From the NCBI RefSeq assembly GCF_023055435.1, contig NW_025963857.1, positions 23,312,001 through 23,376,000 on the forward strand: a stretch of DNA of 64,000 nucleotides. The letters run 5' to 3'. Positions 31,076 to 64,000 of the stretch are shown one piece after another. Within the stretch, counting starts at the first letter, position 1. The number at the start of each line of letters is the position of its first letter. This DNA is from Haliotis rufescens. Taxonomy: Eukaryota. The notes below the pieces were generated by a model that was given only the letters and a program-made list of their open reading frames with translations, did no database searches and was not told the DNA's origin. The position numbers and the translations under genes were made by a program.

Positions 31076-31607
31076 ATGTCTCATTGTCGTTCATTTTCAA
31101 GGACAGCGCACACATTTGCATTTCAATACAGTGCACACTGTCTACCCCTTGATACCGTCAATGACTGCTTTGACAAAAATTGACACGCCTGCTTATTTGT
31201 TTCGCTGCATGTTTTTAAAAAGCAAATTGAAATACAGACAGCCAATTCCAGATATTATGGTACTTCAAATGGCCATCAAACCCTTTCCTGGCAGCCCAAA
31301 GGATACATTCCTGTGAAACATGAACTCGGGTAAGTGACATTTGGTGGGAGATATATCAAGCATAAAATCCCTCCTCTTATCATCATGTCCGGTTTCTTCA
31401 GGAACTTAATAGCACATTTCAGTAGTTGATATCTTAGCTAGCAGTAAAACGCAATATCATTGAAGTGTGCTTGGATATTGGTCGACAATACGTACTATGT
31501 CCAGAGTTTACAATATGGAGAAACATAGATCACTCTTCCATTGTGAACATTCAATTCAGATTAAGATTGTCAAACAAATTTCAAGGCGTAAATAAATATG
31601 ACAAGAT

Positions 31608-31613
31608 TTTATT
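31608..31613 (-). terminator. Polyadenylation signal AATAAA of the Gly-rich gene (present in every unit)
   Basis: AATAAA about 65 nt after the TGA, followed by a T-rich tract. Confidence 0.7.
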
Positions 31614-31678
31614 GAACCAATTCCATTGGTTTGAGAAAATACATAAATAGCCAGCATCACATGGCAGGTGATAATAAC

Positions 31679-32268
31679 TCAATAATAGCCGATACCTGAA
31701 ACAAAAAAATAGTAGAATAAAGTTGGGATGTATGGATAAGTCACAACGAAGTCTTGAAACTAGCTGCATGATAAACTATACCAAATATTAGAGAAAGCAG
31801 AGAATAGTTTTAAAGATGTTTTGTAAATGTCATCAGCTTTGTCGCTGAAAATAGTAATACCACATAGGTAAATTATACAATTTTGCAAACGAGACTGGAG
31901 GTATATTTACGGATACGATAAACAAATGATATCATATTTTGTGAAATACCTTTTCCCAATCCAATTCCGTATCCTCCCATTCCGTAGAGACCACCATAGC
32001 CTCCAAGTCCACCGTATAGACCTCCCATGCCTCCGTATAGACCTCCCATGCCTCCGTATAGACCTCCCATGCCTCCGTATAGACCTCCATAGCCTCCAAG
32101 ACCTCCAAGGCCTCCAAGACCTCCAAGGCCTCCGTACAATCCACCCATTCCGTAGCCAATTCCGCCCAGTCCTCCTTTCAACCCGCCAATTCCACCATAC
32201 AGACCGATAGGCTCGGCAAAGGCGGTAACAGCCAGGCAGGCAACAAGAGCGGCGACTATCTTCATCAT
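31679..32268 (-). CDS. Secreted Gly/Leu/Tyr-rich protein copy 1, 111 aa; join(31679..31695,31950..32268)
   Basis: Signal peptide MMKIVAALVACLAVTAFA; GGLY/GGY/GGM repeats; donor AAAAG|gtattt; acceptor tttgtttcag|GTATCGGCTATTATTGA giving GIGYY*; AATAAA downstream. Confidence 0.88.
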
Positions 32269-32599
32269 TTTGAGTATCTATTGAGTAACGGGAAAATCAT
32301 TGTCAAGAAAGGTAAATAGCATGTTATCGTTACTCATCTGGTAAATTCAGTTCACACCACTCATTGTGAATTATGTTATCAGTTTTACTTTCCCCCGCAT
32401 TCATATATTTCCCAATTTACAAGAACGTTTTATGTTAAATATTCGTACTTTTATAAATTGGCTCAACATGAAGATTGAAAACAGCCAGATGCGCAGCAGA
32501 TAAATCAAAAATTAAAAGTATACATATATATCACAAGCAAACCTTAAAATAGTACTTGCAGTTTGGTCTTTACTCGTATCTGTGTCTCAACGGTAGGTG

Positions 32600-32643
32600 A
32601 AGATAAGAGATGATGGAACAGTTTCCCCCGTCCTTTATATATA
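32600..32643 (-). promoter_or_regulatory. TATA box and initiator-like site of the Gly-rich gene (present in every unit); implies a short non-coding exon 1
   Basis: TATATATAAAG at 32643-32633; TCATCT about 30 nt downstream; acceptor caatag| at 32278, 9 nt before the ATG. The exon 1 donor is ambiguous (GA|gtaaag ~32572, CT|gcaagt ~32559 or AA|gtacta ~32555). Confidence 0.65.
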
Positions 32644-32919
32644 CCATTTGTGAATTTTACGTGATTGATTTACCTTGGGCTGGCCACTTCCAGGTAAGTA
32701 ACGCACCTCAGCTTCATGGTGTAAAGTAAGCATTCTTTTCGCATCAAAGGGCCCGAGGTTATCACCCTACGGGTACACATGCGAGCTGGTATTCATGAAC
32801 ATCGATTAAGGAAGTACAAGACAACGTATATAAAGGTGGCAAACAGACACACTCTCTCTGGCATCGTCTAACTGCATTTCAAACAGTCCTCGATACTCAA
32901 TGTTTAACCTATATTATTT

Positions 32920-33086
32920 AGGGGCGGTCGGGTAGCCTAGTGGTTAAAGTGTTCGCTCGTTACGCCGAAGACACGGGTTCGATTTCCGACATGGGTACAA
33001 TGTGTGTAGCCCATTGCTGGTGTCCCCCGCCGTGATATTGCTGGAAAATTGCTAAAAGCGGCGTAAAACCATACTCACTCACTCAC
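32920..33086 (+). mobile_element. Short tRNA-derived SINE upstream of the Gly-rich gene promoter (also at 37369, 41824, 46279, 50734, 55207, 59662)
   Basis: Same family as 12280; 14-bp TSD tttaacctatatta. Confidence 0.92.
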
Positions 33087-33692
33087 TTTAACCTATATTA
33101 AGTGAATATTCGATAATGGTCTGAAAAGTGTGTATTCAGTAAATATATGATGTGGGAGCAACATACATCAGACATTATAATGCATCTGTGTGATACGACA
33201 TAACATGAGACCAGAAAACTGACGCAACACACCAGTACAGCCTCGCCACAGTACAGCAGTAGCACTGTACCACACGAGGTCAACTATGCTAACCGTTTCC
33301 GTGTAATACAGCAGCCTGCTCACAAGAAAATAGCTTCTGCTGAATATACTGCAGAAGTCCCCAGATACTACATTATTCTCCCCGAATTTTATTTATCTTA
33401 CTGCACAATAACTATAAACTACAACAGCTTTATTTCCTAACTGAAAGGGACATATATTGGTTTCTTCTCACAAAGGGACTGTCACTATGAATACTCACAA
33501 CAACGTTTTATGTGTGTAGTATCTGTTAAAAGCCGAAAGTACACCAGTGTCTTCTGAAAACATGATTGACATATGAACAACAGCTTGTTTTCTCGTCTTT
33601 GATGACTTGTCTTTGTATGTGTTTGTGACGGTGGAACCGATGGGGCAGGATACGCTTACTTTTTGGCAACCGCCCGGTATCATCACTATCTG

Positions 33693-33958
33693 GTTGGTTA
33701 GTTGGTTGGTTGGTTGTTTAACGCCGCACTCAGCAATATTCCTGCTATTATATGACGGCGGTCTGTAAATAATCGAGTCTGGACCAGACAATCCAGTGAT
33801 TAAAATCATTAGCATCGATCCACGCAATTAGGATCGATGACATGCATCAACCAAGTCAGCGAGCCTGACCACCCGATCCCGTTAGTCGCCTTTTACGACA
33901 AGCATAGTCACCTTTTACGGCAAGCATGGGTTGCTGAAGACCCATTCTACCCCGGAAT
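33693..33958 (-). mobile_element. Headless SINE-like copy inside each array unit (also ~38142, 42597, 47052, 51507, 55980, 60435), inserted in a PLE 3'-UTR remnant (33600-34020, + strand)
   Basis: 9-bp TSD cactatctg; the rejoined flanks match the reverse complement of the 10200-10445 PLE 3' motif. Confidence 0.88.
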
Positions 33959-36111
33959 CCACTATCTGATAGTCATTCATACGCACATGCTGTGATCATT
34001 ATAGTCGGAATCGTACAATGGCCTCTGCTTCGAGCAGAGCTTTCGAATGATTCTGAAAAGGGTTTTGTGGCGTTTATTTGCAACTGCGTTTCTTGAGAGA
34101 ACTCTCTTATCTTCAACATATCATCTTGATAATTGTACACTTCATTATCAAGGAATTTGTGATAATACGAGCATCACTAAATTTGATATCTCAATTTTTA
34201 TAGATAACGCCTGAATATTGATATAATAATCATTCAATGATGACCCTTTAACTACATAAATCGTCAACGCCAGAGAATATTCAGGCTCGATTATCTGTTG
34301 AAACAGATTTCATTGGGTGTAAAAGGCAAGATTGTGCTAAAATGTATACTGAATATCAGTGATGTCACCAGGTGTTAGTGAATAGTTCATATTTGTTGGA
34401 TGTTTCATGAGCTCCTCCGTCCGTTCCATCGTGTGCCAAATTGGGAGAATGTTGTCTTTTGACAATGTCTCAGCCATTCATACTTTTGCATATATACTTA
34501 ATCACTGTTGCAAATAACTCACTTTAACGTGTTTTAATCTTCGGCTGAGTCTTAGGTTGTAAACATTAGAAGAAAGTATATAAATCGTCTCTACCCTTTA
34601 CGTATGCCCTTGACATTATGAAGCAGTAGTGATAGTGATGATTGTGTTCTTTCAAGGCGTGTTTAGACCAAAACTCTTACCAAGAATAAAACACGCGCAA
34701 ATCAGTTTGACAATGTGTAACTATATAAGGGTTGCCCAGAAAAACCGTACATCTAAAAGTAAAGGCGTGTGTTTTCAGAAGAAAATGCTCTTAAAGTATA
34801 ACACAGAGGTGTTTTCAAAGATAGACATGATCAAACGACTTGTTTTTACAGTCTGGTTGTTGTTATAAAGACTTATGACACGCTTTAAAGTTGGACCATT
34901 TATTCCGCTGAATTTCACTCTCTACAGTTACCAAATGCAATCTCCTTTGTATTGATAAATGATTGTCACTTCTGCTTTGTAATCAAACAATAGGGATATA
35001 TTAGCTATTTGTTTGTTCATTGTAATCTTCAATCCTACCAATCCAGTTCGGAATCTTCAAATTCGCGCTCTGATTTAATCAATATGTATTTTACAAATAG
35101 CGCCTACAGGGAAGGTGGTTAGTAAACACACAACTAAATATCTATATAGATACTTCTCCTATTAATTACATAAGCAGTATGCAAAATGTTAAATTGCATC
35201 ATCAAATCAAGAAGTACATGTTTGATGGAAATTACAAATAATTCGTAGTTTGATAAGCTATACCCGGACAAGCGTATTTAATAGTTACTTTTGAATTCAA
35301 TCGTTTTGTTTGTGTAATTGATAAACTGTAAAGATATGTTATTGTCATGGAAATTCCAACTGTATGCATTCCCTTCTAACCAAAGCAGTAAGAATCTTGC
35401 AACATTTGTTTTGATGCTCTACATCACTATGGCTTTCGGGTTTGTTTTATTGCAGCAGCTCAGATATTATTTATACAAAGCGCCATAACAACATGTAGAT
35501 TGTATTCTGAATACAACTTTCGCTCATTTTCAAGGACAGCGCACACATTTGCATTTCAATACAGTGCACACTGTCTACCCCTTGATACCGTCAATGACTG
35601 CTTTGACAAAAATTGACACGCCTGCTTATTTGTTTCGCTGCATGTTTTTAAAATGCAAATTGAAATACAGACAGCCAATTCCAGATATTATGGTACTTCA
35701 AATGGCCATCAAACCCTTTCCTGGCAGCCCAAATGAAACATTCCCGTGAAACATGAACTCGGGTAAGTGACATTTGGTGGGAGATATATCAAGCATAAAA
35801 TCCGTCCTCTTATCATCATGTCCGGTTTCCTCAGGAACTTAATAGCACTTTTCAGTAGTTGATATCTTACCTAGCAGTAAAACGCAATATCATTGAAGTG
35901 TGCTTGGATATTGGTCGACAACACGTACTATGTCCAGAGTTTACAATATGAAGAAACATTGATCACTCTTCCATTGTGAACATTCAATTCAGATTAAGAT
36001 TTTCAAACAAATTTCAAGGCGTAAATAAATATGACAAGATTTTATTGAACCAATTCCATTGGTTTGAGAAAATACATAAATAGCCAGCATCACACTGCAG
36101 GTGATAATAAC

Positions 36112-36716
36112 TCAATAATAGCCGATACCTGAAACAAAAAAATAGTAGAATAAAGTTGGGATGTATGGATAAGTCACAACGAAGTCTTGAAACTAGCTGC
36201 ATGATAAACTATACCAAATATTAGAGAAAGCAGAGAATAGTTTTAAAGATGTTTTGTAAATGTCATCAGCTTTGTCGCGGAAAATAGTAATACCACATAG
36301 GTAAATTATGCAATTTTGCAAACGAGACTGGAGGTACATTTACGGATACGATAAACAAATGATATCATATTTTGTGAAATACCTTTTCCCAATCCAATTC
36401 CGTATCCTCCCATTCCGTAGAGACCACCATAGCCCCCGAGTCCTCCGTACAGACCTCCCATGCCGTATCCGTATTTGCCTCCGTATAGACCTCCCATGCC
36501 TCCGTATAGACCTCCCATGCCTCCGTATAGACCTCCATAGCCTCCAAGACCTCCAAGGCCTCCAAGACCTCCAAGGCCTCCGTACAATCCACCCATTCCG
36601 TAGCCAATTCCGCCCAGTCCTCCTTTCAACCCGCCAATTCCACCATACAGACCGATAGGCTCGGCAAAGGCGGTAACAGCCAGGCAGGCAACAAGAGCGG
36701 CGACTATCTTCATCAT
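36112..36716 (-). CDS. Secreted Gly/Leu/Tyr-rich protein copy 2, 116 aa; join(36112..36128,36383..36716)
   Basis: As copy 1, with extra KYGYG; splice sites intact. Confidence 0.88.
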
Positions 36717-39700
36717 TTTGAGTATCTATTGAGTAACGGGAAAATCATTGTCAAGAAAGGTAAAATAGCATGTTATCGTTACTCATCTGGTAAATTCAGT
36801 TCACACCACTCATTGTGAATTATGTTATCAGTTTTGCTTTCACCCGCATTCATATATTTCTCAATTTACAAGAACGTCTTATGTTACATATTCGGACTTT
36901 TATGAATTGGCTCAACATAAAGATTGAAAACAGCCTGATGCGCAGCAGATGAATCAAAAATTAAAAGTATACATATATATCACAAGCAAAATTTCAATTA
37001 GTACTTGCAGTTTGGTCTTTACTCGTATCTGTGTCTCAACGGCAGGTGAAGATAAGAGATGATGGAACAGTTTCCCCCGTCCTTTATATATACCATTTGT
37101 GAATTATACGTGATTGATTTACCTTGGGCTGGCCACTTCCAGGTAAGTAACGCACCTCAGCTTAATGGTGTAAAGTAAGCATTCTTTTCGCATCAAAGGG
37201 CCCGAGGTTATCACCCTACGGGTACACATGCGAGCTGGTATTCATGAACATCGATTAAGGAAGTACAAGACAACGTATATAAAGGTGGCAAACAGACACA
37301 CTCTCTCTGGCATCGTCTAACTGCATTTCAAACAGTCCTCGATACTCAATGTTTAACCTATATTATTTAGGGGCGGTCGGGTAGCCTAGTGGTTAAAGCG
37401 TTCGCTCGTTACGCCGAAGACACGGGTTCGATTTCCGACATGGGTACAATGTGTGTAGCCCATTGCTGGTGTCCCCCGCCGTGATATTGCTGGAAAATTG
37501 CTAAAAGCGGCGTAAAACCATACTCACTCACTCACTTTAACCTATATTAAGTGAATATTCGATAATGGTCTGAAAAGTGTGTATTCAGTAAATATATGAT
37601 GTGGGAGCAACATACATCAGACATTATAATGCATCTGTGTGATACGACATAACATGAGACCAGAAAACTGACGCAACACACCAGTACAGCCTCGCCACAG
37701 TACAGCAGTAGCACTGTACCACACGGGGTCAACTATGCTAACCGTTTCCGTGTAATACAGCAGCCTGCTCACAAGAAAATAGCTTCTGCTGAATATACTG
37801 CAGAAGTCCCCAGATACTACATTATTCTCCCCGAATTTTATTTATCTTACTGCACAATAACTATAAACTACAACAGCTTTATTTCCTAACTGAAAGGGAC
37901 ATATATTGGTTTCTTCTCACAAAGGGACTGTCACTATGAATACTCACAACAACGTTTTATGTGTGTAGTATCTGTTAAAAGCCGAAAGTACACCAGTGTC
38001 TTCTGAAAACATGATTGACATATGAACAACAGCTTGTTTTCTCGTCTTTGATGACTTGTCTTTGTATGTGTTTGTGACGGTGGAACCGATGGGGCAGGAT
38101 ACGCTTACTTTTTGGCAACCGCCCGGTATCATCACTATCTGGTTGGTTAGTTGGTTGGTTGGTTGTTTAACGCCGCACTCAGCAATATTCCTGCTATTAT
38201 ATGACGGCGGTCTGTAAATAATCGAGTCTGGACCAGACAATCCATTGATTAAAATCATTAGCATCGATCCACGCAATTAGGATCGATGACATGCATCAAC
38301 CAAGTCAGCGAGCCTGACCACCCGATCCCGTTAGTCGCCTTTTACGACAAGCATAGTCACCTTTTACGGCAAGCATGGGTTGCTGAAGACCTATTCTACC
38401 CCGGAATCCACTATCTGATAGTCATTCATACGCACATGCTGTGATCATTATAGTCGGAATCGTACAATGGCCTCTGCTTCGAGCAGAGCTTTCGAATGAT
38501 TCTGAAAAGGGTTTTGTGGCGTTTATTTGCAACTGCGTTTCTTGAGAGAACTCTCTTATCTTCAACATATCATCTTGATAATTGTACACTTCATTATCAA
38601 GGAATTTGTGATAATACGAGCATCACTAAATTTGATATCTCAATTTCTATAGATAACGCCTGAATATTGATATAATAATCATTCAATGATGACCCTTTAA
38701 CTACATAAATCGTCAACGCCAGAGAATATTCAGGCTCGATTATCTGTTGAAACAGATTTCATTGGGTGTAAAAGGCAAGATTGTGCTAAAATGTATACTG
38801 AATATCAGTGATGTCACCAGGTGTTAGTGAATAGTTCATATTTGTTGGATGTTTCATGAGCTCCTCCGTCCGTTCCATCGTGTGCCAAATTGGGAGAATG
38901 TTGTCTTTTGACAATGTCTCAGCCATTCATACTTTTGCATATATACTTAATCACTGTTGCAAATAACTCACGTTAACGTGTTTTAATCTTCGGCTGAGTC
39001 TTAGGTCGTAAACATTAGAAGAAAGTAAAGAAATCGTCTCTACCCTTTACGTATGCCCTTGACGTCGACATGATGAGGCAGTAGTGATAGTGATGATTGT
39101 GTTCTTTTAAGGCGTGTTTAGACCAAAACTCTTACCAAGAATAAAACACGCGCAAATCAGTTTGACAATGTGTAACTATATAAGGGTTGCCCAGAAAAAC
39201 CGTACATCTAAAAGTAAAGACGTGTGTTTTCAGAAGAAAATGCTCTTAAAGTATAACACAAAGGTGTTTTCAAAGATAGACATGATCAAACGACTTGTTT
39301 TTACAGTCTGGTTGTTGTTATAAAGACTTATGACACGCTTTAAAGTTGGACCATTTATTCCGCTGAATTTCACTCTCTACAGTTACCAAATGCAATCTCC
39401 TTTGTATTGATAAATGATTGTCACTTCTGCTTTGTAATCAAACAATAGGGATATATTAGCTATTTGTTTGTTCATTGTAATCTTCAATCCTACCAATCCA
39501 GTTCGGAATCTTCAAATTCGCGCTCTGATTTAATCAATATGTATTTTACAAATAGCGCCTACAGGGAAGGTGGTTAGTAAACACACAACTAAATATCTAT
39601 ATAGATACTTCTCCTATTAATTACATAAGCAGTATGCAAAATGTTAAATTGCATCATCAAATCAAGAAGTACATGTTTGATGGAAATTACAAATAATTCG

Positions 39701-40566
39701 TAGTTTGATAAGCTATACCCGGACAAGCGTATTTAATAGTTACTTTTGAATTCAATCGTTTTGTTTGTGTAATTGATAAACTGTAAAGATATGTTATTGT
39801 CATGGAAATTCCAACTGTATGCATTCCCTTCTAACCAAAGCAGTAAGAATCTTGCAACATTTGTTTTGATGCTCTACATCACTATGGCTTTCGGGTTTGT
39901 TTTATTGCAGCAGCTCAGATATTATTTATACAAAGCGCCATAACAACATGTAGATTGTATTCTGAATACAACTTTCGCTCATTTTCAAGGACAGCGCACA
40001 CATTTGCATTTCAATACAGTGCACACTGTCTACCCCTTGATACCGTCAATGACTGCTTTGACAAAAATTGACACGCCTGCTTATTTGTTTCGCTGCATGT
40101 TTTTAAAATGCAAATTGAAATACAGACAGCCAATTCCAGATATTATGGTACTTCAAATGGCCATCAAACCCTTTCCTGGCAGCCCAAATGATACATTCCC
40201 GTGAAACATGAACTCGGGTAAGTGACATTTGGTGGGAGATATATCAAGCATAAAATCCCTCCTCTTATCATCATGTCCGGTTTCCTCAGGAACTTAATAG
40301 CACTTTTCAGTAGTTGATATCTTAGCTAGCAGTAAAACGCAATATCATTGAAGTGTGCTTGGATATTGGTCGACAACACGTACTATGTCCAGAGTTTACA
40401 ATATGAAGAAACATTGATCACTCTTCCATTGTGAACATTCAATTCAGATTAAGATTTTCAAACAAATTTCAAGGCGTAAATAAATATGACAAGATTTTAT
40501 TGAACCAGTTCCATTGGTTTGAGAAAATACATAAATAGCCAGCATCACACTGCAGGTGATAATAAC

Positions 40567-41171
40567 TCAATAATAGCCGATACCTGAAACAAAAAAATAG
40601 TAGAATAAAGTTGGGATGTATGGATAAGTCACAACGAAGTCTTGAAACTAGCTGCATGATAAACTATACCAAATATTAGAGAAAGCAGAGAATAGTTTTA
40701 AAGATGTTTTGTAAATGTCATCAGCTTTGTCGCGGAAAATAGTAATACCACATAGGTAAATTATGCAATTTTGCAAACGAGACTGGAGGTACATTTACGG
40801 ATACGATAAACAAATGATATCATATTTTGTGAAATACCTTTTCCCAATCCAATTCCGTATCCTCCCATTCCGTAGAGACCACCATAGCCCCCGAGTCCTC
40901 CGTACAGACCTCCCATGCCGTATCCGTATTTGCCTCCGTATAGACCTCCCATGCCTCCGTATAGACCTCCCATGCCTCCGTATAGACCTCCATAGCCTCC
41001 AAGACCTCCAAGGCCTCCAAGACCTCCAAGGCCTCCGTACAATCCACCCATTCCGTAGCCAATTCCGCCCAGTCCTCCTTTCAACCCGCCAATTCCACCA
41101 TACAGACCGATAGGCTCGGCAAAGGCGGTAACAGCCAGGCAGGCAACAAGAGCGGCGACTATCTTCATCAT
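40567..41171 (-). CDS. Secreted Gly/Leu/Tyr-rich protein copy 3, 116 aa; join(40567..40583,40838..41171)
   Basis: Same protein as copy 2. Confidence 0.88.
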
Positions 41172-53931: not shown

Positions 53932-54554
53932 TCAATAATAGCCGATACCTGAAACAAAAAAATAGTAGAATAAAGTTGGGATGTATGGATAAGTCACAAC
54001 GAAGTCTTGAAACTAGCTGCATGATAAACTATACCAAATATTAGAGAAAGCAGAGAATAGTTTTAAAGATGTTTTGTAAATGTCATCAGCTTTGTCGCGG
54101 AAAATAGTAATACCACATAGGTAAATTATGCAATTTTGCAAACGAGACTGGAGGTACATTTACGGATACGATAAACAAATGATATCATATTTTGTGAAAT
54201 ACCTTTTCCCAATCCAATTCCGTATCCTCCCATTCCGTAGAGACCACCATAGCCCCCGAGTCCTCCGTACAGACCTCCCATGCCGTATCCGTATTTGCCT
54301 CCGTATAGACCTCCCATGCCTCCGTATAGACCTCCCATGCCTCCGTATAGACCTCCATAGCCTCCAAGACCTCCAAGGCCTCCAAGACCTCCAAGGCCTC
54401 CAAGACCTCCAAGGCCTCCGTACAATCCACCCATTCCGTAGCCAATTCCGCCCAGTCCTCCTTTCAACCCGCCAATTCCACCATACAGACCGGTAGGCTC
54501 GGCAAAGGCGGTAACAGCCAGGCAGGCAACAAGAGCGGCGACTATCTTCATCAT
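53932..54554 (-). CDS. Secreted Gly/Leu/Tyr-rich protein copy 6, 122 aa (I21T, +LGGLGG); join(53932..53948,54203..54554)
   Basis: In-frame 18-bp repeat expansion; splice sites intact. Confidence 0.88.
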
Positions 54555-57500
54555 TTTGAGTATCTATTGAGTAACGGGAAAATCATTGTCAAGAAAGGTA
54601 AAATAGCATGTTATCGTTACTCATCTGGTAAATTCAGTTCACACCACTCATTGTGAATTATGTTATCAGTTTTGCTTTCACCCGCATTCATATATTTCTC
54701 AATTTACAAGAACGTCTTATGTTACATATTCGGACTTTTATGAATTGGCTCAACATAAAGATTGAAAACAGCCTGATGCGCAGCAGATGAATCAAAAATT
54801 AAAAGTATACATATATATCACAAGCAAAATTTCAATTAGTACTTGCAGTTTGGTCTTTACTCGTATCTGTGTCTCAACGGCAGGTGAAGATAAGAGATGA
54901 TGGAACAGTTTCCCCCGTCCTTTATATATACCATTTGTGAATTATACGTGATTGATTTACCTTGGGCTGGCCACTTCCAGGTAAGTAACGCACCTCAGCT
55001 TAATGGTGTAAAGTAAGCATTCTTTTCGCATCAAAGGGCCCGAGGTTATCACCCTACGGGTACACATGCGAGCTGGTATTCATGAACATCGATTAAGGAA
55101 GTACAAGACAACGTATATAAAGGTGGCAAACAGACACACTCTCTCTGGCATCGTCTAACTGCATTTCAAACAGTCCTCGATACTCAATGTTTAACCTATA
55201 TTATTTAGGGGCGGTCGGGTAGCCTAGTGGTTAAAGCGTTCGCTCGTTACGCCGAAGACACGGGTTCGATTTCCGACATGGGTACAATGTGTGTAGCCCA
55301 TTGCTGGTGTCCCCCGCCGTGATATTGCTGGAAAATTGCTAAAAGCGGCGTAAAACCATACTCACTCACTCACTTTAACCTATATTAAGTGAATATTCGA
55401 TAATGGTCTGAAAAGTGTGTATTCAGTAAATATATGATGTGGGAGCAACATACATCAGACATTATAATGCATCTGTGTGATACGACATAACATGAGACCA
55501 GAAAACTGACGCAACACACCAGTACAGCCTCGCCACAGTACAGCAGTAGCACTGTACCACACGGGGTCAACTATGCTAACCGTTTCCGTGTAATACAGCA
55601 GCCTGCTCACAAGAAAATAGCTTCTGCTGAATATACTGCAGAAGTCCCCAGATACTACATTATTCTCCCCGAATTTTATTTATCTTACTGCACAATAACT
55701 ATAAACTACAACAGCTTTATTTCCTAACTGAAAGGGACATATATTGGTTTCTTCTCACAAAGGGACTGTCACTATGAATACTCACAACAACGTTTTATGT
55801 GTGTAGTATCTGTTAAAAGCCGAAAGTACACCAGTGTCTTTTGAAAACATGATTGACATATGAACAACAGCTTGTTTTCTCGTCTTTGATGACTTGTCTT
55901 TGTATGTGTTTGTGACGGTGGAACCGATGGGGCAGGATACGCTTACTTTTTGGCAACCGCCCGGTATCATCACTATCTGGTTGGTTAGTTGGTTGGTTGG
56001 TTGTTTAACGCCGCACTCAGCAATATTCCTGCTATTATATGACGGCGGTCTGTAAATAATCGAGTCTGGACCAGACAATCCATTGATTAAAATCATTAGC
56101 ATCGATCCACGCAATTAGGATCGATGACATGCATCAACCAAGTCAGCGAGCCTGACCACCCGATCCCGTTAGTCGCCTTTTACGACAAGCATAGTCACCT
56201 TTTACGGCAAGCATGGGTTGCTGAAGACCTATTCTACCCCGGAATCCACTATCTGATAGTCATTCATACGCACATGCTGTGATCATTATAGTCGGAATCG
56301 TACAATGGCCTCTGCTTCGAGCAGAGCTTTCGAATGATTCTGAAAAGGGTTTTGTGGCGTTTATTTGCAACTGCGTTTCTTGAGAGAACTCTCTTATCTT
56401 CAACATATCATCTTGATAATTGTACACTTCATTATCAAGGAATTTGTGATAATACGAGCATCACTAAATTTGATATCTCAATTTCTATAGATAACGCCTG
56501 AATATTGATATAATAATCATTCAATGATGACCCTTTAACTACATAAATCGTCAACGCCAGAGAATATTCAGGCTCGATTATCTGTTGAAACAGATTTCAT
56601 TGGGTGTAAAAGGCAAGATTGTGCTAAAATGTATACTGAATATCAGTGATGTCACCAGGTGTTAGTGAATAGTTCATATTTGTTGGATGTTTCATGAGCT
56701 CCTCCGTCCGTTCCATCGTGTGCCAAATTGGGAGAATGTTGTCTTTTGACAATGTCTCAGCCATTCATACTTTTGCATATATACTTAATCACTGTTGCAA
56801 ATAACTCACGTTAACGTGTTTTAATCTTCGGCTGAGTCTTAGGTCGTAAACATTAGAAGAAAGTAAAGAAATCGTCTCTACCCTTTACGTATGCCCTTGA
56901 CGTCGACATGATGAGGCAGTAGTGATAGTGATGATTGTGTTCTTTTAAGGCGTGTTTAGACCAAAACTCTTACCAAGAATAAAACACGCGCAAATCAGTT
57001 TGACAATGTGTAACTATATAAGGGTTGCCCAGAAAAACCGTACATCTAAAAGTAAAGACGTGTGTTTTCAGAAGAAAATGCTCTTAAAGTATAACACAAA
57101 GGTGTTTTCAAAGATAGACATGATCAAACGACTTGTTTTTACAGTCTGGTTGTTGTTATAAAGACTTATGACACGCTTTAAAGTTGGACCATTTATTCCG
57201 CTGAATTTCACTCTCTACAGTTACCAAATGCAATCTCCTTTGTATTGATAAATGATTGTCACTTCTGCTTTGTAATCAAACAATAGGGATATATTAGCTA
57301 TTTGTTTGTTCATTGTAATCTTCAATCCTACCAATCCAGTTCGGAATCTTCAAATTCGCGCTCTGATTTAATCAATATGTATTTTACAAATAGCGCCTAC
57401 AGGGAAGGTGGTTAGTAAACACACAACTAAATATCTATATAGATACTTCTCCTATTAATTACATAAGCAGTATGCAAAATGTTAAATTGCATCATCAAAT

Positions 57501-58404
57501 CAAGAAGTACATGTTTGATGGAAATTACAAATAATTCGTAGTTTGATAAGCTATACCCGGACAAGCGTATTTAATAGTTACTTTTGAATTCAATCGTTTT
57601 GTTTGTGTAATTGATAAACTGTAAAGATATGTTATTGTCATGGAAATTCCAACTGTATGCATTCCCTTCTAACCAAAGCAGTAAGAATCTTGCAACATTT
57701 GTTTTGATGCTCTACATCACTATGGCTTTCGGGTTTGTTTTATTGCAGCAGCTCAGATATTATTTATACAAAGCGCCATAACAACATGTAGATTGTATTC
57801 TGAATACAACTTTCGCTCATTTTCAAGGACAGCGCACACATTTGCATTTCAATACAGTGCACACTGTCTACCCCTTGATACCGTCAATGACTGCTTTGAC
57901 AAAAATTGACACGCCTGCTTATTTGTTTCGCTGCATGTTTTTAAAATGCAAATTGAAATACAGACAGCCAATTCCAGATATTATGGTACTTCAAATGGCC
58001 ATCAAACCCTTTCCTGGCAGCCCAAATGATACATTCCCGTGAAACATGAACTCGGGTAAGTGACATTTGGTGGGAGATATATCAAGCATAAAATCCCTCC
58101 TCTTATCATCATGTCCGGTTTCCTCAGGAACTTAATAGCACTTTTCAGTAGTTGATATCTTAGCTAGCAGTAAAACGCAATATCATTGAAGTGTGCTTGG
58201 ATATTGGTCGACAACACGTACTATGTCCAGAGTTTACAATATGAAGAAACATTGATCACTCTTCCATTGTGAACATTCAATTCAGATTAAGATTTTCAAA
58301 CAAATTTCAAGGCGTAAATAAATATGACAAGATTTTATTGAACCAGTTCCATTGGTTTGAGAAAATACATAAATAGCCAGCATCACACTGCAGGTGATAA
58401 TAAC

Positions 58405-59009
58405 TCAATAATAGCCGATACCTGAAACAAAAAAATAGTAGAATAAAGTTGGGATGTATGGATAAGTCACAACGAAGTCTTGAAACTAGCTGCATGATAA
58501 ACTATACCAAATATTAGAGAAAGCAGAGAATAGTTTTAAAGATGTTTTGTAAATGTCATCAGCTTTGTCGCGGAAAATAGTAATACCACATAGGTAAATT
58601 ATGCAATTTTGCAAACGAGACTGGAGGTACATTTACGGATACGATAAACAAATGATATCATATTTTGTGAAATACCTTTTCCCAATCCAATTCCGTATCC
58701 TCCCATTCCGTAGAGACCACCATAGCCCCCGAGTCCTCCGTACAGACCTCCCATGCCGTATCCGTATTTGCCTCCGTATAGACCTCCCATGCCTCCGTAT
58801 AGACCTCCCATGCCTCCGTATAGACCTCCATAGCCTCCAAGACCTCCAAGGCCTCCAAGACCTCCAAGGCCTCCGTACAATCCACCCATTCCGTAGCCAA
58901 TTCCGCCCAGTCCTCCTTTCAACCCGCCAATTCCACCATACAGACCGGTAGGCTCGGCAAAGGCGGTAACAGCCAGGCAGGCAACAAGAGCGGCGACTAT
59001 CTTCATCAT
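58405..59009 (-). CDS. Secreted Gly/Leu/Tyr-rich protein copy 7, 116 aa (I21T); join(58405..58421,58676..59009)
   Basis: Same protein as copy 5. Confidence 0.88.
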
Positions 59010-62000
59010 TTTGAGTATCTATTGAGTAACGGGAAAATCATTGTCAAGAAAGGTAAAATAGCATGTTATCGTTACTCATCTGGTAAATTCAGTTCACACC
59101 ACTCATTGTGAATTATGTTATCAGTTTTGCTTTCACCCGCATTCATATATTTCTCAATTTACAAGAACGTCTTATGTTACATATTCGGACTTTTATGAAT
59201 TGGCTCAACATAAAGATTGAAAACAGCCTGATGCGCAGCAGATGAATCAAAAATTAAAAGTATACATATATATCACAAGCAAAATTTAAATTAGTACTTG
59301 CAGTTTGGTCTTTACTCGTATCTGTGTCTCAACGGCAGGTGAAGATAAGAGATGATGGAACAGTTTCCCCCGTCCTTTATATATACCATTTGTGAATTAT
59401 ACGTGATTGATTTACCTTGGGCTGGCCACTTCCAGGTAAGTAACGCACCTCAGCTTAATGGTGTAAAGTAAGCATTCTTTTCGCATCAAAGGGCCCGAGG
59501 TTATCACCCTACGGGTACACATGCGAGCTGGTATCCATGAACATCGATTAAGGAAGTACAAGACAACGTATATAAAGGTGGCAAACAGACACACTCTCTC
59601 TGGCATCGTCTAACTGCATTTCAAACAGTCCTCGATACTCAATGTTTAACCTATATTATTTAGGGGCGGTCGGGTAGCCTAGTGGTTAAAGCGTTCGCTC
59701 GTTACGCCGAAGACACGGGTTCGATTTCCGACATGGGTACAATGTGTGTAGCCCATTGCTGGTGTCCCCCGCCGTGATATTGCTGGAAAATTGCTAAAAG
59801 CGGCGTAAAACCATACTCACTCACTCACTTTAACCTATATTAAGTAAATATTCGATAATGGTCTGAAAAGTGTGTATTCAGTAAATATATGATGTGGGAG
59901 CAACATACATCAGACATTATAATGCATCTGTGTGATACGACATAACATGAGACCAGAAAACTGACGCAACACACCAGTACAGCCTCGCCACAGTACAGCA
60001 GTAGCACTGTACCACACGGGGTCAACTATGCTAACCGTTTCCGTGTAATACAGCAGCCTGCTCACAAGAAAATAGCTTCTGCTGAATATACTGCAGAAGT
60101 CCCCAGATACTACATTATTCTCCCCGAATTTTATTTATCTTACTGCACAATAACTATAAACTACAACAGCTTTATTTCCTAACTGAAAGGGACATATATT
60201 GGTTTCTTCTCACAAAGGGACTGTCACTATGAATACTCACAACAACGTTTTATGTGTGTAGTATCTGTTAAAAGCCGAAAGTACACCAGTGTCTTCTGAA
60301 AACATGATTGACATATGAACAACAGCTTGTTTTCTCGTCTTTGATGACTTGTCTTTGTATGTGTTTGTGACGGTGGAACCGATGGGGCAGGATACGCTTA
60401 CTTTTTGGCAACCGCCCGGTATCATCACTATCTGGTTGGTTAGTTGGTTGGTTGGTTGTTTAACGCCGCACTCAGCAATATTCCTGCTATTATATGACGG
60501 CGGTCTGTAAATAATCGAGTCTGGACCAGACAATCCATTGATTAAAATCATTAGCATCGATCCACGCAATTAGGATCGATGACATGCATCAACCAAGTCA
60601 GCGAGCCTGACCACCCGATCCCGTTAGTCGCCTTTTACGACAAGCATAGTCACCTTTTACGGCAAGCATGGGTTGCTGAAGACCTATTCTACCCCGGAAT
60701 CCACTATCTGATAGTCATTCATACGCACATGCTGTGATCATTATAGTCGGAATCGTACAATGGCCTCTGCTTCGAGCAGAGCTTTCGAATGATTCTGAAA
60801 AGGGTTTTGTGGCGTTTATTTGCAACTGCGTTTCTTGAGAGAACTCTCTTATCTTCAACATATCATCTTGATAATTGTACACTTCATTATCAAGGAATTT
60901 GTGATAATACGAGCATCACTAAATTTGATATCTCAATTTTTATAGATAACGCCTGAATATTGATATAATAATCATTCAATGATGACCCTTTAACTACATA
61001 AATCGTCAACGCCAGAGAATATTCAGGCTCGATTATCTGTTGAAACAGATTTCATTGGGTGTAAAAGGCAGGATTGTGCTAAAATGTATACTGAATATCA
61101 GTGATGTCACCAGGTGTTAGTGAATAGTTCATATTTGTTGGATGTTTCATGAGCTCCTCCGTCCGTTCCATCGTGTGCCAAATTGGGAGAATGTTGTCTT
61201 TTGACAATGTCTCAGCCATTCATACTTTTGCATATATACTTAATCACTGTTGCAAATAACTCACGTTAACGTGTTTTAATCTTCGGCTGAGTCTTAGGTC
61301 GTAAACATTAGAAGAAAGTAAAGAAATCGTCTCTACCCTTTACGTATGCCCTTGACGTCGACATGATGAAGCAGTAGTGATAGTGATGATTGTGTTCTTT
61401 TAAGGCGTGTTTAGACCAAAACTCTTACCAAGAATAAAACACGCGCAAATCAGTTTGACAATGTGTAACTATATAAGGGTTGCCCAGAAAAACCGTACAT
61501 CTAAAAGTAAAGACGTGTGTTTTCAGAAGAAAATGCTCTTAAAGTATAACACAAAGGTGTTTTCAAAGATAGACATGATCAAACGACTTGTTTTTACAGT
61601 CTGGTTGTTGTTATAAAGACTTATGACACGCTTTAAAGTTGGACCATTTATTCCGCTGAATTTCACTCTCTACAGTTACCAAATGCAATCTCCTTTGTAT
61701 TGATAAATGATTGTCACTTCTGCTTTGTAATCAAACAATAGGGATATATTAGCTATTTGTTTGTTCATTGTAATCTTCAATCCTACCAATCCAGTTCGGA
61801 ATCTTCAAATTCGCGCTCTGATTTAATCAATATGTATTTTACAAATAGCGCCTACAGGGAAGGTGGTTAGTAAACACACAACTAAATATCTATATAGATA
61901 CTTCTCCTATTAGTTACATAAGCAGTATGCAAAATGTTAAATTGCATCATCAAATCAAGAAGTACATGTTTGATGGAAATTACAAATAATTCGTAGTTTG

Positions 62001-62859
62001 ATAAGCTATACCCGGACAAGCGTATTTAATAGTTACTTTTGAATTCAATCGTTTTGTTTGTGTAATTGATAAACTGTAAAGATATGTTATTGTCATGGAA
62101 ATTCCAACTGTATGCATTCCCTTCTAACCAAAGCAGTAAGAATCTTGCAACATTTGTTTTGATGCTCTACATCACTATGGCTTTCGGGTTTGTTTTATTG
62201 CAGCAGCTCAGATATTATTTATACAAAGCGCCATAACAACATGTAGATTGTATTCTGAATACAACTTTCGCTCATTTTCAAGGACAGCGCACACATTTGC
62301 ATTTCAATACAGTGCACACTGTCTACCCCTTGATACCGTCAATGACTGCTTTGACAAAAATTGACACGCCTGCTTATTTGTTTCGCTGCATGTTTTTAAA
62401 ATGCAAATTGAAATACAGACAGCCAATTCCAGATATTATGGTACTTCAAATGGCCATCAAACCCTTTCCTGGCAGCCCAAATGATACATTCCCGTGAAAC
62501 ATGAACTCGGGTAAGTGACATTTGGTGGGAGATATATCAAGCATAAAATCCCTCCTCTTATCATCATGTCCGGTTTCCTCAGGAACTTAATAGCACATTT
62601 CAGTAGTTGATATCTTACCTAGCAGTAAAACGCAATATCATTGAAGTGTGCTTGGATATTGGTCGACAACACGTACTATGTCCAGAGTTTACAATATGGA
62701 GAAACATAGATCACTCTTCCATTGTGAACATTCAATTCAGATTAAGATTTTCAAACAAATTTCAAGGCGTAAATAAATATGACAAGATTTTATTGAACCA
62801 ATTCCATTGGTTTGAGAAAATACATAAATAGCCAGCATCACACTGCAGGTGATAATAAC

Positions 62860-63464
62860 TCAATAATAGCCGATACCTGAAACAAAAAAATAGTAGAATA
62901 AAGTTGGGATGTATGGATAAGTCACAACGAAGTCTTGAAACTAGCTGCATGATAAACTATACCAAATATTAGAGAAAGCAGAGAATAGTTTTAAAGATGT
63001 TTTGTAAATGTCATCAGCTTTGTCGCGGAAAATAGTAATACCACATAGGTAAATTATGCAATTTTGCAAACGAGACTGGAGGTACATTTACGGATACGAT
63101 AAACAAATGATATCATATTTTGTGAAATACCTTTTCCCAATCCAATTCCGTATCCTCCCATTCCGTAGAGACCACCATAGCCCCCGAGTCCTCCGTACAG
63201 ACCTCCCATGCCGTATCCGTATTTGCCTCCGTATAGACCTCCCATGCCTCCGTATAGACCTCCCATGCCTCCGTATAGACCTCCATAGCCTCCAAGACCT
63301 CCAAGGCCTCCAAGACCTCCAAGGCCTCCGTACAATCCACCCATTCCGTAGCCAATTCCGCCCAGTCCTCCTTTCAACCCGCCAATTCCACCATACAGAC
63401 CGATAGGCTCGGCAAAGGCGGTAACAGCCAGGCAGGCAACAAGAGCGGCGACTATCTTCATCAT
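62860..63464 (-). CDS. Secreted Gly/Leu/Tyr-rich protein copy 8, 116 aa; join(62860..62876,63131..63464)
   Basis: Same protein as copy 2. Confidence 0.88.
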
Positions 63465-64000
63465 TTTGAGTATCTATTGAGTAACGGGAAAATCATTGTC
63501 AAGAAAGGTAAAATAGCATGTTATCGTTACTCATCTGGTAAATTCAGTTCACACCACTCATTGTGAATTATGTTATCAGTTTTGCTTTCACCCGCATTCA
63601 TATATTTCTCAATTTACAAGAACGTCTTATGTTACATATTCGGACTTTTATGAATTGGCTCAACATAAAGATTGAAAACAGCCTGATGCGCAGCAGATGA
63701 ATAAAAAATTAAAAGTATACATATATATCACAAGCAAAATTTAAATTAGTACTTGCAGTTTGGTCTTTACTCGTATCTGTGTCTCAACGGCAGGTGAAGA
63801 TAAGAGATGATGGAACAGTTTCCCCCGTCCTTTATATATACCATTTGTGAATTATACGTGATTGATTTACCTTGGGCTGGCCACTTCCAGGTAAGTAACG
63901 CACCTCAGCTTAATGGTGTAAAGTAAGCATTCTTTTCGCATCAAAGGGCCCGAGGTTATCACCCTACGGGTACACATGCGAGCTGGTATTCATGAACATC

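What the first reader, a model, noticed from the sequence alone, without database searches (positions are those of the whole stretch)
31088..64000. Recently amplified tandem array of at least 8 intact genes for a small secreted Gly/Leu/Tyr protein
Seen: each ~4,455-bp unit carries a complete transcription unit (TATA, 5' UTR intron, signal peptide exon, last micro-exon, AATAAA). All eight copies keep an open frame and the coding-exon splice sites. Units differ by only scattered SNPs, including in introns, spacer and embedded SINEs, and the array runs off the window. Known: near-identical tandem arrays of single protein genes occur where bulk product is needed or copy number is under selection. 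Inference: a dosage-amplified secreted biomaterial (shell or periostracum matrix, operculum, radula, egg coat, adhesive) or a Gly-rich defence peptide locus, probably copy-number variable. I do not recognise a named gene.
Basis: partly seen in the sequence, partly recalled or inferred. Interest (0 to 1): 0.85.

Follow-up and report, generated by a model that had tools for sequence, protein, structure and literature searches.

The report
Amplified abalone glycine-tyrosine protein gene array
The red abalone genome holds a real tandem array of 39 near-identical, spliced and very highly expressed genes (8 of them in this window) for a small secreted glycine/leucine/tyrosine protein. It belongs to an abalone-only family of about 130 genes that most likely supplies bulk cross-linkable shell or periostracum material, but the tissue is not yet known.

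Summary
Window 31087-64000 holds 7 full units and 1 partial unit of about 4,455 bp. Each unit carries an intact three-exon gene on the minus strand: TATA box, 5'UTR exon, GC-AG intron, signal-peptide/repeat exon, a 254-nt intron, a micro-exon encoding ...GIGYY*, and AATAAA.

Contigs of runs the tool only guesses to be RNA show both splice joints. Summed depth is about 10^5 on the coding exon and under 100 in the spacer. One run of the same study has none.

The array continues to 39 copies over about 197 kb. A 94%-identical sister array (52 copies), a third array (22 copies) and a mixed-orientation cluster (about 10) bring the family to about 130 genes. This scan had already reported the third array on other DNA (s1-805541).

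Orthologues exist only in Haliotis. One H. asinina RefSeq model strings 16 copies together, so the array state is old and kept uniform by concerted evolution, not simply "recently amplified".

The mature 98-aa protein is 54% Gly, 15% Leu and 15% Tyr, with net charge +2. It resembles Has-tsfgr1, shematrins, Lymnaea glycine-rich shell candidates and suckerin M2 modules.

Best reading: a dosage-amplified, tyrosine-cross-linkable structural protein of the shell-forming mantle. The tissue was not determined. Gene kind known; scale of amplification new.

The parts
31087..64000 (-). Tandem array: 7 full units and 1 truncated unit of about 4,455 bp. These are the first 8 of 39 units on this contig.
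   Evidence: Self-BLAST offsets; unit table; continuation beyond the window.
31590..32613 (-). Gene copy 1, the edge copy and the most divergent. Coding exon 31950-32277 (106 codons plus 1 nt), intron 1 32278-32559, intron 2 31696-31949, micro-exon CDS 31679-31695, AATAAA 31608-31613, TATA at 32643. The transcript ends are estimates.
   Evidence: depth on the exons.
36023..37062 (-). Gene copy 2, the reference model. The transcript ends are estimated from the TATA box and AATAAA.
   Evidence: splice joints.
37009..37062 (-). Copy 2 exon 1 (5'UTR). The 3' end at 37009 is fixed by a splice joint. The 5' end is estimated at about 30 nt downstream of the TATA box (37081-37092).
   Evidence: Joint 36725->37009 and loose ends; TATA position.
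36726..37008 (-). Copy 2 intron 1, 283 nt, a GC-AG intron (donor ACT|GCAAGT).
   Evidence: Joint with depth 16,124 in X15 and 445 in X17. The GC donor is present in all 28 type-A copies examined. Sister array B has GT at the same place.
36383..36725 (-). Copy 2 exon 2: 9 nt of 5'UTR, ATG at 36716, an 18-aa signal peptide, and Gly/Leu/Tyr/Met repeats (111 codons plus 1 nt, phase 1).
   Evidence: Translation; depth of about 4x10^5 in X15.
36129..36382 (-). Copy 2 intron 2, 254 nt, GT-AG.
   Evidence: Joint 36124->36379 with 'cut +4', read CT..AC on the + strand, in 4 contigs of X17. The loose end CAATAATAGCCG occurs in X15.
36023..36128 (-). Copy 2 exon 3: 17 coding nt (completes G, then IGYY and stop, ending at 36112) plus the 3'UTR with AATAAA at 36041-36046.
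   Evidence: The same C-terminus ...GLGKGIGYY is in H. asinina RefSeq protein P0001.
40478..41517 (-). Gene copy 3 (ATG 41171, exon 2 40838-41180).
44933..45972 (-). Gene copy 4 (ATG 45626, exon 2 45293-45635).
49388..50427 (-). Gene copy 5 (ATG 50081, exon 2 49748-50090; I21T variant).
53843..54900 (-). Gene copy 6 (ATG 54554, exon 2 54203-54563; 117-codon variant with two extra GGL repeats).
58316..59355 (-). Gene copy 7 (ATG 59009, exon 2 58676-59018).
62771..63810 (-). Gene copy 8 (ATG 63464, exon 2 63131-63473), complete although its unit is cut by the window end.
32920..33087 (.). Interspersed repeat 1 in the spacer of unit 1 (SINE-like). The same element sits in every unit.
   Evidence: Contig pile-up of about 5x10^5 in all four runs, with loose ends at 32920/32921 and 33087. 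No tRNA or Rfam call.
33702..33956 (.). Interspersed repeat 2 in the spacer of unit 1 (SINE-like), present in every unit.
   Evidence: Copies at 87-90% identity at window 2824, 5749, 6886, 14069, 17060 and 18897; pile-up.

Best explanation
Shown here: each 4.46-kb unit is one TATA-driven, three-exon gene. Its product is an 18-aa signal peptide followed by a 98-aa mature protein built from only eight residue types (54% Gly, 15% Leu, 15% Tyr, 5% Ile, 5% Met, 3 Lys, 1 Glu, 1 Pro). The protein consists of GGLYGGMGG-type repeats and ends in GLGKGIGYY. The gene is present as 39 near-identical tandem copies here and about 130 family members genome-wide. It is spliced as modelled and reaches very high transcript levels in some samples and none in another.

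Inferred: the array is a dosage amplification, kept uniform by unequal crossing-over or gene conversion. It lets a small population of secretory cells, most likely at the shell-forming mantle edge or larval shell field, pour out a hydrophobic, nearly uncharged glycine-loop protein. That protein self-associates outside the cell and is made insoluble by peroxidase- or tyrosinase-driven cross-linking of its Gly-flanked tyrosines. The product would be periostracum or organic shell framework.
For: Array and intact genes. All 58 copies examined are open and keep both donors, both acceptors and the micro-exon.

Splicing and expression: both introns appear as joints. Summed contig depth on the coding exon is 3-4x10^5 in X15 and 2.5-3.4x10^5 in X17, against 0-100 in non-repeat spacer. 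X16, from the same study and organism, has about 0. Zero-mismatch contigs over type-A introns show that this array itself is transcribed.

Family size: 91 exact hits of the ATG 25-mer, 93 of the donor 22-mer, and 134 of the signal-peptide 21-mer against 2 in the reversed control.

Old array with concerted evolution: units differ by 0-84 substitutions in about 4,455 bp and the edge unit is the most divergent. Sister array B is 93-96% identical over 3 kb including promoter and introns. H. asinina model P0007 strings 16 signal peptides at a 109-aa period.

Composition.

Structural analogues:
- Has-tsfgr1 is a 114-aa secreted Gly/Leu/Tyr repeat protein ending in Tyr. It is expressed in the larval shell field and the edge of the juvenile outer mantle fold (PMC2034539).
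- Lymnaea Lstag-sfc-6/7/8 are secreted Gly/Tyr/Leu proteins expressed next to the periostracal peroxidase zone. Gly-flanked Tyr favours di-tyrosine cross-links (PMC6007483).
- Suckerin M2 modules are built from the same GGLY/GLGGY/GYG peptides and can be cross-linked through Tyr by peroxidase (PMC11931252).

Shell proteomes were made after bleaching away the periostracum and with trypsin (PMC2989941; PMC6003135). That could explain why this protein, with only 3 Lys, is absent from them.
Against: The tissue or stage of the expressing runs is coded and unknown, so a mantle or shell-field origin is inferred by analogy only. Run kind is 'RNA? (a guess)', although the exon/intron depth contrast and the joints argue for RNA. 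Summed contig depth is a poor measure of expression.

No peptide of this protein has been reported in abalone shell proteomes. Homology to Has-tsfgr1, shematrins or suckerins is not shown. The profile search of 1.84 billion proteins found only Haliotis proteins. Resemblance by composition is weak evidence for function. The ESM Atlas nearest neighbours, arthropod cuticle proteins, score only 0.77-0.80, which is chance level.
Confidence: 0.5

Rival explanations
1. Same kind of bulk structural protein, but for another extracellular material: radula or jaw matrix, larval operculum, pedal adhesive or mucus threads, or an egg coat.
For: Expression is very high in some runs and absent in another of the same study, which fits any specialised secretory tissue. 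The closest match in repeat chemistry is the suckerin M2 module of squid sucker-ring teeth, a non-mineralised protein-only tool. The protein is absent from published shell proteomes.
Against: The only abalone protein of this class with localisation data (Has-tsfgr1) is restricted to shell-forming cells. The Lymnaea analogues are also mantle-zone genes. There is no direct evidence for any other organ.
Confidence: 0.27
2. A glycine-rich antimicrobial or defence peptide locus (ctenidin, acanthoscurrin or nematode NLP-29/31 type), amplified for immune dosage.
For: RefSeq's automatic names for relatives are 'ctenidin-1-like' and 'neuropeptide-like protein 31'. Small secreted Gly/Tyr/Leu peptides of this size are known antimicrobials in spiders and nematodes (my own knowledge). 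Gly/Leu-rich antibacterial peptides are reported from snail mucus (titles and abstracts).
Against: The mature protein has no Arg or His. Its only charged side chains are 3 Lys and 1 Glu, net +2 over 98 residues, whereas the known Gly-rich antimicrobials are strongly cationic (my own knowledge). The names are composition-driven, and no homology outside Haliotis was found. About 130 nearly identical copies and a dominant mRNA fit a building material better than a peptide effector.
Confidence: 0.1
3. The array is an assembly artefact: false expansion of one or a few copies.
For: Read depth could not be checked, because only contigs, not raw DNA reads, were on offer. One pair of units (ATG 50081 and 59009) has no substitution difference.
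Against: Nearly all units are told apart by private SNPs and in-frame repeat indels that form ordered blocks along the array. At least two large insertions interrupt it. A distinct 52-copy sister array and a 22-copy third array exist. Independent assemblies of H. asinina and H. cracherodii have gene models that string 16 and 7 copies. RNA contigs carry several repeat-length variants (table 4).
Confidence: 0.03

Closest known systems
Haliotis RefSeq models: 'glycine-rich protein-like' and 'neuropeptide-like protein 31' (H. asinina XP_067657837-849 = P0001, P0004-P0006) and 'PE-PGRS54-like' XP_067657820 = P0007
   Same: True orthologues. They share the signal peptide MMKIVA.LV.CLAVTAFAEPTGLYG, the GGKYGYG motif and the C-terminus GYGIGLGKGIGYY. 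E = 2.5e-15 for the single search and 1.7e-38 against the profile. They are also tandem (16 copies strung in one model).
   Different: They exist only as automatic annotations with composition-driven names. The repeat region is shorter and about 63% identical. The array has not been described and no function has been tested.
[quoted passage not shown] 2007, PMC2034539)
   Same: A 114-aa secreted protein with a 17-aa signal peptide and a mature part of Gly/Leu/Tyr repeats (>52% Gly) that ends in Tyr. It comes from the same genus and has the same size and architecture.
   Different: Its reported motif is GGYGLGL and its C-terminus is GYKGY, against GGLYGGMGG and GIGYY here. The H. asinina orthologue of this gene (P0001) is a different protein from the one described.
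Shematrins (Pinctada fucata prismatic-layer glycine-rich proteins)
   Same: Secreted Gly-rich repeat proteins with hydrophobic residues or Tyr between Gly runs and a C-terminal Tyr. They form a multigene family expressed at the mantle edge (as summarised in PMC2034539). RefSeq names the family's type-D paralogue in H. cracherodii 'shematrin-like protein 2'.
   Different: The basic C-terminal cluster recalled for shematrins is missing, there is no detectable sequence homology, and this protein is much smaller.
Lymnaea stagnalis glycine-rich shell-forming candidates Lstag-sfc-6/7/8 (PMC6007483)
   Same: Secreted, weakly basic, low-complexity Gly/Tyr/Leu proteins with Gly-flanked Tyr. They are proposed substrates of the periostracal peroxidase and were likewise not found in other shell proteomes.
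   Different: They are also Asn-rich, no sequence homology is shown, and they are not reported as large arrays.
Suckerin M2 modules (squid sucker-ring teeth)
   Same: M2 is made of the same GGLY, GLGGY, GGY and GYG peptides. It is amorphous, Tyr-rich (up to about 15% Tyr in whole suckerins) and can be cross-linked to di-Tyr by peroxidase. The string GGLYGG in the paper library occurs almost only in papers on squid-ring-teeth proteins.
   Different: Suckerins alternate M2 with Ala/Val/Thr/Ser/His-rich beta-sheet M1 modules flanked by Pro, and they are larger (roughly 18-39 kDa among those listed in that review). This protein is M2-like throughout and has no His, Ala, Val, Thr or Ser in its mature part.
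Glycine-rich antimicrobial peptides (ctenidins, acanthoscurrins, C. elegans NLP-29/31)
   Same: Small, secreted, dominated by Gly with Tyr and Leu. The nematode genes are clustered (my own knowledge).
   Different: Those peptides are strongly cationic (Arg, Lys, His). This protein has a net charge of +2. No homology was found.

Membership tests
Haliotis-specific GLY-protein family (RefSeq 'glycine-rich protein-like', H. asinina) | Alignable signal peptide, N-terminal stretch and C-terminal GLGKGIGYY, with a significant E-value despite the low complexity | tested here: met
   P0001 at E = 2.5e-15. It is still found at 1.4e-6, 88% identical, when only residues 1-40 are scored. Alignment A1. Profile hits are P0001, P0003, P0002 and P0008 only.
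Has-tsfgr1-like larval shell proteins | Small secreted protein (about 114 aa, 17-aa signal) whose mature part is Gly/Leu/Tyr repeats ending in Tyr | tested here: met
   An 18-aa signal plus a 98-aa mature part, 54% Gly, 15% Leu, 15% Tyr, ending in YY, compared with the description in PMC2034539.
Has-tsfgr1-like larval shell proteins | GGYGLGL repeat motif and GYKGY C-terminus (sequence identity with DW986319) | tested here: not met
   The repeats here are GGLYGGMGG/GGLGG and the C-terminus is GIGYY. The H. asinina orthologue P0001 also lacks both features.
Has-tsfgr1-like larval shell proteins | Expression restricted to the larval shell field and the edge of the juvenile outer mantle fold | not testable with these tools
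   The runs are coded with no tissue or stage, and the single read-laying run is used.
Shematrin | Secreted, Gly-rich repeats separated by hydrophobic or Tyr residues | tested here: met
Shematrin | Conserved C-terminal motif ending in Tyr (PMC2034539), recalled from memory as a basic Arg/Lys cluster | tested here: not met
   The protein ends ...GLGKGIGYY, with a single Lys seven residues from the end and no Arg.
Shematrin | Detectable sequence homology to Pinctada shematrins | tested here: not met
   The profile search of 1.84 billion proteins returned four Haliotis proteins only. HMMER's composition correction may hide low-complexity relatives.
Suckerin | Alternating P[M1]P[M2] modules, where M1 is Ala/Val/Thr/Ser/His-rich and forms beta-sheets | tested here: not met
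   The mature protein has no Ala, His, Thr, Ser or Val and only one Pro. Only the M2-type chemistry is shared.
Glycine-rich cationic antimicrobial peptides (ctenidin/acanthoscurrin type) | Strong net positive charge | tested here: not met
   3 Lys, 1 Glu, no Arg or His: net +2 over 98 residues.
Glycine-rich cationic antimicrobial peptides (ctenidin/acanthoscurrin type) | Antimicrobial activity; expression in haemocytes or challenged epithelium | not testable with these tools
   This needs a bench assay and tissue-resolved RNA data.
Pfam / Rfam families | Any curated domain or RNA family in the unit | tested here: not met
   Pfam: 0 families for the exon product, P0001 and P0002. Rfam and ARAGORN: 0 hits in unit 1.

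The most novel reading that the evidence does not exclude
Abalones keep a genus-wide, concertedly evolving battery of about 130 genes in four or more arrays (39 + 52 + 22 + about 10). The genes encode an 'M2-only' suckerin-like Gly/Leu/Tyr protein. Gene number, not promoter strength, would then set how fast a few mantle-edge cells can lay down a tyrosine-cross-linked protein film. This would be an independent molluscan invention of the squid ring-teeth chemistry, with copy number as a selectable lever on shell growth.
Probability: 0.3. Interest if true: 0.65.

Novelty: new member of a known kind. Interest (0 to 1): 0.5.

Why it matters
Tandem arrays of dozens of identical protein-coding genes are rare in animals outside histones, chorion or cuticle genes and fish antifreeze genes. 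This one gives a clean, transcribed example in a mollusc of commercial and conservation interest.

If the product is a periostracum or shell-framework precursor, its copy number is an obvious candidate for variation in shell growth and repair between abalone stocks.

The protein is also a natural, minimal version (eight residue types, about 9 kDa) of the glycine/tyrosine modules now engineered from squid ring teeth.

There is a practical annotation point as well. RefSeq models in other abalones fuse up to 16 copies into one 'protein' and carry misleading names such as PE-PGRS, spidroin, ctenidin and neuropeptide-like.

Tried and rejected
- TRF reported no array because the period exceeds 500. 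This is not evidence against the array.
- Pfam, Rfam and ARAGORN gave nothing.
- The ESM Atlas gave only arthropod cuticle-protein clusters at 0.77-0.80, which is chance level.
- tblastn of the exon product against the 51 kb left of the array found no further copy, so the array starts abruptly at 31087.
- Literature: no paper in the library holds GIGYY or LYGGMGG in a mollusc context. 'tsfgr1' occurs in one paper only. 'Haliotis + shematrin-like', 'abalone + ctenidin' and a search for 'glycine and methionine-rich' gave nothing on this gene. The two abalone shell proteome papers and the H. asinina secretome and silk-like-protein papers do not describe it.
- I looked for Has-tsfgr1's sequence among relatives of the type-D paralogue. 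Only two compositional look-alikes came back: an unnamed Logan protein and Mya arenaria 'neuropeptide-like protein 31'.
The far half of the array is known only from pattern hits.
- Read depth, and therefore copy number from reads, could not be tested. All DNA holders are kept as contigs, and the only raw-read runs are miRNA libraries.
Searches used the coding exon by reference, and composition was obtained by adding counts of the two coding pieces.
- The N run at 3784-3940 was left alone.
- No structure or complex prediction was run. A low-complexity protein without a deep alignment would give no usable model.

Full report
**1.

A self-BLAST of the window shows one long direct repeat from 31087 to the window end. 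Offsets are multiples of about 4,455 bp (4433, 8888 ... 31181) and identity is 97.1-99.4%. The units start at 31087, 35520, 39975, 44430, 48885, 53340, 57813 and 62268. The last unit is cut by the window end after 1,733 bp. TRF's silence is only a period limit. The only N run in the window is 3784-3940, and I left it alone.

**2. The gene**

The gene lies on the minus strand. For all eight copies, one search finds the following parts:
- a TATA box (TATATATAAAGG);
- a short 5'UTR exon ending ...CAAACT;
- a 282/283-nt intron with a GC donor (GCAAGT) and an AG acceptor;
- a second exon with 9 nt of leader, then the ATG and 106, 111 or 117 codons, ending in phase 1;
- a 254-nt GT-AG intron;
- a last exon with only 17 coding bases (completing Gly, then Ile-Gly-Tyr-Tyr-stop);
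- AATAAA about 66 nt downstream of the stop codon.

The product starts MMKIVAALVACLAVTAFA|EP. I infer that this is a signal peptide from the hydrophobic core and the A-x-A cleavage site.

**3. Transcript evidence**

Only one reads call was allowed, and all usable runs are kept as contigs whose kind the tool guesses to be RNA. Laid on window 31300-37200, which covers two gene copies, two runs stand out. X15 carries the same organism label as the best DNA holders. X17 is labelled as another organism.

Summed contig depths were as follows:

| Region | X15 | X17 |
|---|---|---|
| Coding-exon bins | 3.1-4.2x10^5 | 2.5-3.4x10^5 |
| Bins that are mostly intron | about 10^3 | about 10^3 |
| Non-repeat spacer bins | 0-100 | 25-90 |

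Both introns appear as joints:
- 36124->36379 'cut +4', read CT..AC on the + strand, in four X17 contigs. This places the intron at 36129-36382.
- 36725->37009, read CT..GC, at depth 16,124 in X15 and 445 in X17. This is a GC-AG intron at 36726-37008.

The loose ends spell the neighbouring exons (CAATAATAGCCG, ATCATTTTGAGTAT, AGTTTGGTCTTTACT...). Zero- or one-mismatch contigs over type-A intron sequence (records 2 and 6) show that this array itself is transcribed. X16, from the same study and organism label as X15, has essentially no depth on the gene.

Independently, H. asinina RefSeq protein P0001 ends ...GYGIGLGKGIGYY, which confirms the micro-exon. The caveats are that depth here is a sum over contigs and cannot rank genes, and that the tissue or stage of the runs is hidden.

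**4. The array is far larger than the window shows**

The next 110 kb to the right holds 20 more intact coding exons, which makes 28 in a row. Two spacings are enlarged. The other is 11,897 bp.

Whole-genome pattern searches then gave these counts:

| Pattern | Hits | Detail |
|---|---|---|
| 25-mer at the ATG | 91 exact | |
| 22-mer at the exon-2 donor | 93 | C79 39, C24 52, C190 1, C589 1 |
| 21-mer in the signal peptide, up to 2 mismatches | 134 | 2 hits for the reversed control |

On this contig the array runs from C79:23,343,087 to about 23,540,000, which is 39 copies in about 197 kb.

**5. Subfamilies**

| Type | Location | Copies | Main features |
|---|---|---|---|
| A | C79 (this array) | 39 | 4.46-kb unit, GC-AG intron 1 |
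| B | C24, several blocks | 52 | about 4.0-kb unit, slightly different repeat set (VGG, no KYGYG), 247-nt intron 2, canonical GT donor in intron 1 |
| C | C190:6,878,655-6,905,772 | about 10 | mixed orientation; matches H. rubra 'ctenidin-1-like' P0002 |
| D | C1:81,309,395-81,387,541, plus one copy 1 Mb away | 22 | about 3.9-kb period; matches H. cracherodii 'shematrin-like protein 2' P0008 |

- Type B is 93-96% identical to type A over 3 kb, including promoter, introns and flanks.
- Type D shares only about 70% identity with type A in the coding exon, and no noncoding similarity was found beyond one short 62-bp match.
- Type D is very probably the 21-copy array that this scan reported earlier on other DNA (s1-805541).
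- All 58 type A and B copies examined are open and keep every splice signal.

**6. How the array evolves**

Among 25 full units, pairwise substitution differences range from 0 to 84 in about 4,455 bp. Neighbours are the most alike, with 2-8 differences inside the 4,465-bp block. The first unit, at the edge, is the outlier at 49-84. Units at ATG 50081 and 59009 have no substitution difference, which suggests duplication of a two-unit block.

Variable sites are no rarer in the coding exon (5.1% of columns) than in introns (3.2-6.9%) or spacer (3.4-4.6%). The uniformity therefore comes from turnover, not from purifying selection on the protein. Length variants of the protein (106-118 codons in exon 2) are whole repeats of 9, 15, 18 or 21 nt, so slippage keeps the reading frame.

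Spacer contigs from the runs labelled as other organisms differ from these units by about 3-4% (table 8). That exceeds the divergence within the array. Types A and B differ by 4-7%. One H. asinina RefSeq model (P0007, 1,967 aa) strings 16 signal peptides at a 109-aa period, and one H. cracherodii model (P0009) strings 7.

The array state is therefore genus-wide and old, and the copies are kept alike by unequal crossing-over or gene conversion. 'Recently amplified' describes the copies, not the locus. These independent assemblies, the ordered private variants, the transposon insertions and the several expressed repeat-length variants also make a false assembly expansion unlikely. Read depth itself could not be checked.

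**7. What the protein is**

The mature part of the 111-codon variant has 98 residues: 53 Gly, 15 Leu, 15 Tyr, 5 Ile, 5 Met, 3 Lys, 1 Glu and 1 Pro.

Database searches gave the following:
- Pfam finds nothing.
- A word-seeded search of 5.8 billion proteins finds only three Haliotis proteins. With the signal-peptide region alone it finds only P0001.
- A profile search of 1.84 billion representatives finds four proteins, all Haliotis.
- A last search with the type-D exon adds only two compositional look-alikes. One is a Mya arenaria protein with GGLYGGYG repeats ending ...KGKKGYY.

This is an abalone-restricted family without detectable homologues. Its RefSeq names (glycine-rich protein-like, neuropeptide-like protein 31, ctenidin-1-like, shematrin-like protein 2, spidroin-1-like, PE-PGRS54-like) reflect composition only.

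**8. Function, by analogy**

- Has-tsfgr1 of H. asinina is a 114-aa secreted Gly/Leu/Tyr repeat protein ending in Tyr. It is expressed only in shell-forming cells of larvae and small juveniles (PMC2034539). Its reported motifs (GGYGLGL, GYKGY) are not those of this gene or of its H. asinina orthologue. It is the same kind of protein but not shown to be the same family.
- In Lymnaea, secreted Gly/Tyr/Leu proteins are expressed next to the mantle zone that makes the periostracal peroxidase. Gly-flanked tyrosines are good substrates for di-tyrosine cross-linking (PMC6007483).
- Suckerin M2 modules use the same GGLY/GLGGY/GYG building blocks and can be cross-linked through Tyr by peroxidase (PMC11931252).
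- From memory, and unchecked here: Mytilus periostracin is likewise about half glycine with about 10% tyrosine and some DOPA.

Published abalone shell proteomes bleached off the periostracum and used trypsin. A protein with three lysines would be missed.

I therefore rate a cross-linkable structural protein of the shell-forming mantle (periostracum or organic framework) at about 0.5. The same kind of material in another organ gets about 0.27, a glycine-rich defence peptide about 0.1 (weak charge and sheer gene number argue against it), and an assembly artefact about 0.03.

**9. Novelty**

The gene kind is known, orthologues are in RefSeq, and the scan had already met a sister array. New here are the verified gene model with its fixed GC-AG intron and the scale: 39 copies at this locus and about 130 in four subfamilies. 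Also new are the evidence for very high, sample-specific expression and the evidence that the arrays are old and evolve in concert. No paper in the library describes any of this.

**10. Limits**

- No raw DNA reads were available.
- The joined spliced protein was deliberately not built or searched.

Noticed in passing
window 7224-17008, minus strand: ORF pieces typical of a Cys-loop ligand-gated ion channel, nicotinic-receptor-like (e.g. ...WEPGYVATTTCNVDITYFPFDTQVC...). This is an unrelated neighbouring gene left of the array.
   Followed up: no
window 25238-28469, minus strand: Long ORFs of a non-LTR retrotransposon (endonuclease plus reverse-transcriptase-like, 431 aa and neighbours) lie 2.6 kb before the abrupt array start at 31087. 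I did not examine whether the element marks the array boundary.
   Followed up: no
window 36726-37008 and the same intron in every type-A copy: Intron 1 has a GC donor (ACT|GCAAGT) in all 28 type-A copies examined, while sister array B (contig C24) has GTAAGT at the same site. A single T-to-C change has spread through the whole array, and the intron is still spliced.
   Followed up: yes
beyond the window: C79:23,402,212-23,417,610; 23,457,819-23,469,692; 23,523,230-23,534,852: Three enlarged spacings interrupt the array (15.4, 11.9 and 11.6 kb in place of 4.46 kb). The first coincides with the 11-kb CACTG transposon of note s1-816388. I did not look at the other two.
   Followed up: partly
window 48900-53372 and 57828-62282 (units with ATG 50081 and 59009): These two non-adjacent units show no substitution difference over about 4.46 kb, while the unit between them differs from each by 13. 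This suggests a recent duplication of a two-unit (8.9-kb) block.
   Followed up: partly
P0007 (H. asinina XP_067657820), P0009/P0008/P0010 (H. cracherodii): RefSeq gene models read through 16, 7, 3 and 2 tandem copies and are named PE-PGRS54-like, spidroin-1-like and shematrin-like protein 2. These are annotation artefacts caused by the arrays.
   Followed up: yes
L046-L052 (G000:C190:6,877,155-6,907,272): Subfamily C (MMKIIVVLVACLAVA.YAKP...) is arranged in mixed, partly head-to-head orientation, unlike the strictly head-to-tail arrays A, B and D. Several of its matches contain in-frame stop codons and may be pseudogenes.
   Followed up: partly
P0012 (Mya arenaria 'neuropeptide-like protein 31'): This bivalve secreted protein has GGLYGGYG repeats and ends ...KGKKGYY. 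It looks like a link between the abalone C-terminus (GKGIGYY) and the basic, Tyr-ending C-terminal motif described for shematrins. The E-value is only 1.8e-3, so it could be convergence.
   Followed up: no
G000:C24:1,353,248-1,355,389; C589:1,413,376; C423:1,101,533; C1:86,539,283; C57:1,971,951-1,981,170; C591:490,051-556,594: Scattered single or paired family members lie outside the four main clusters. They were not read.
   Followed up: no
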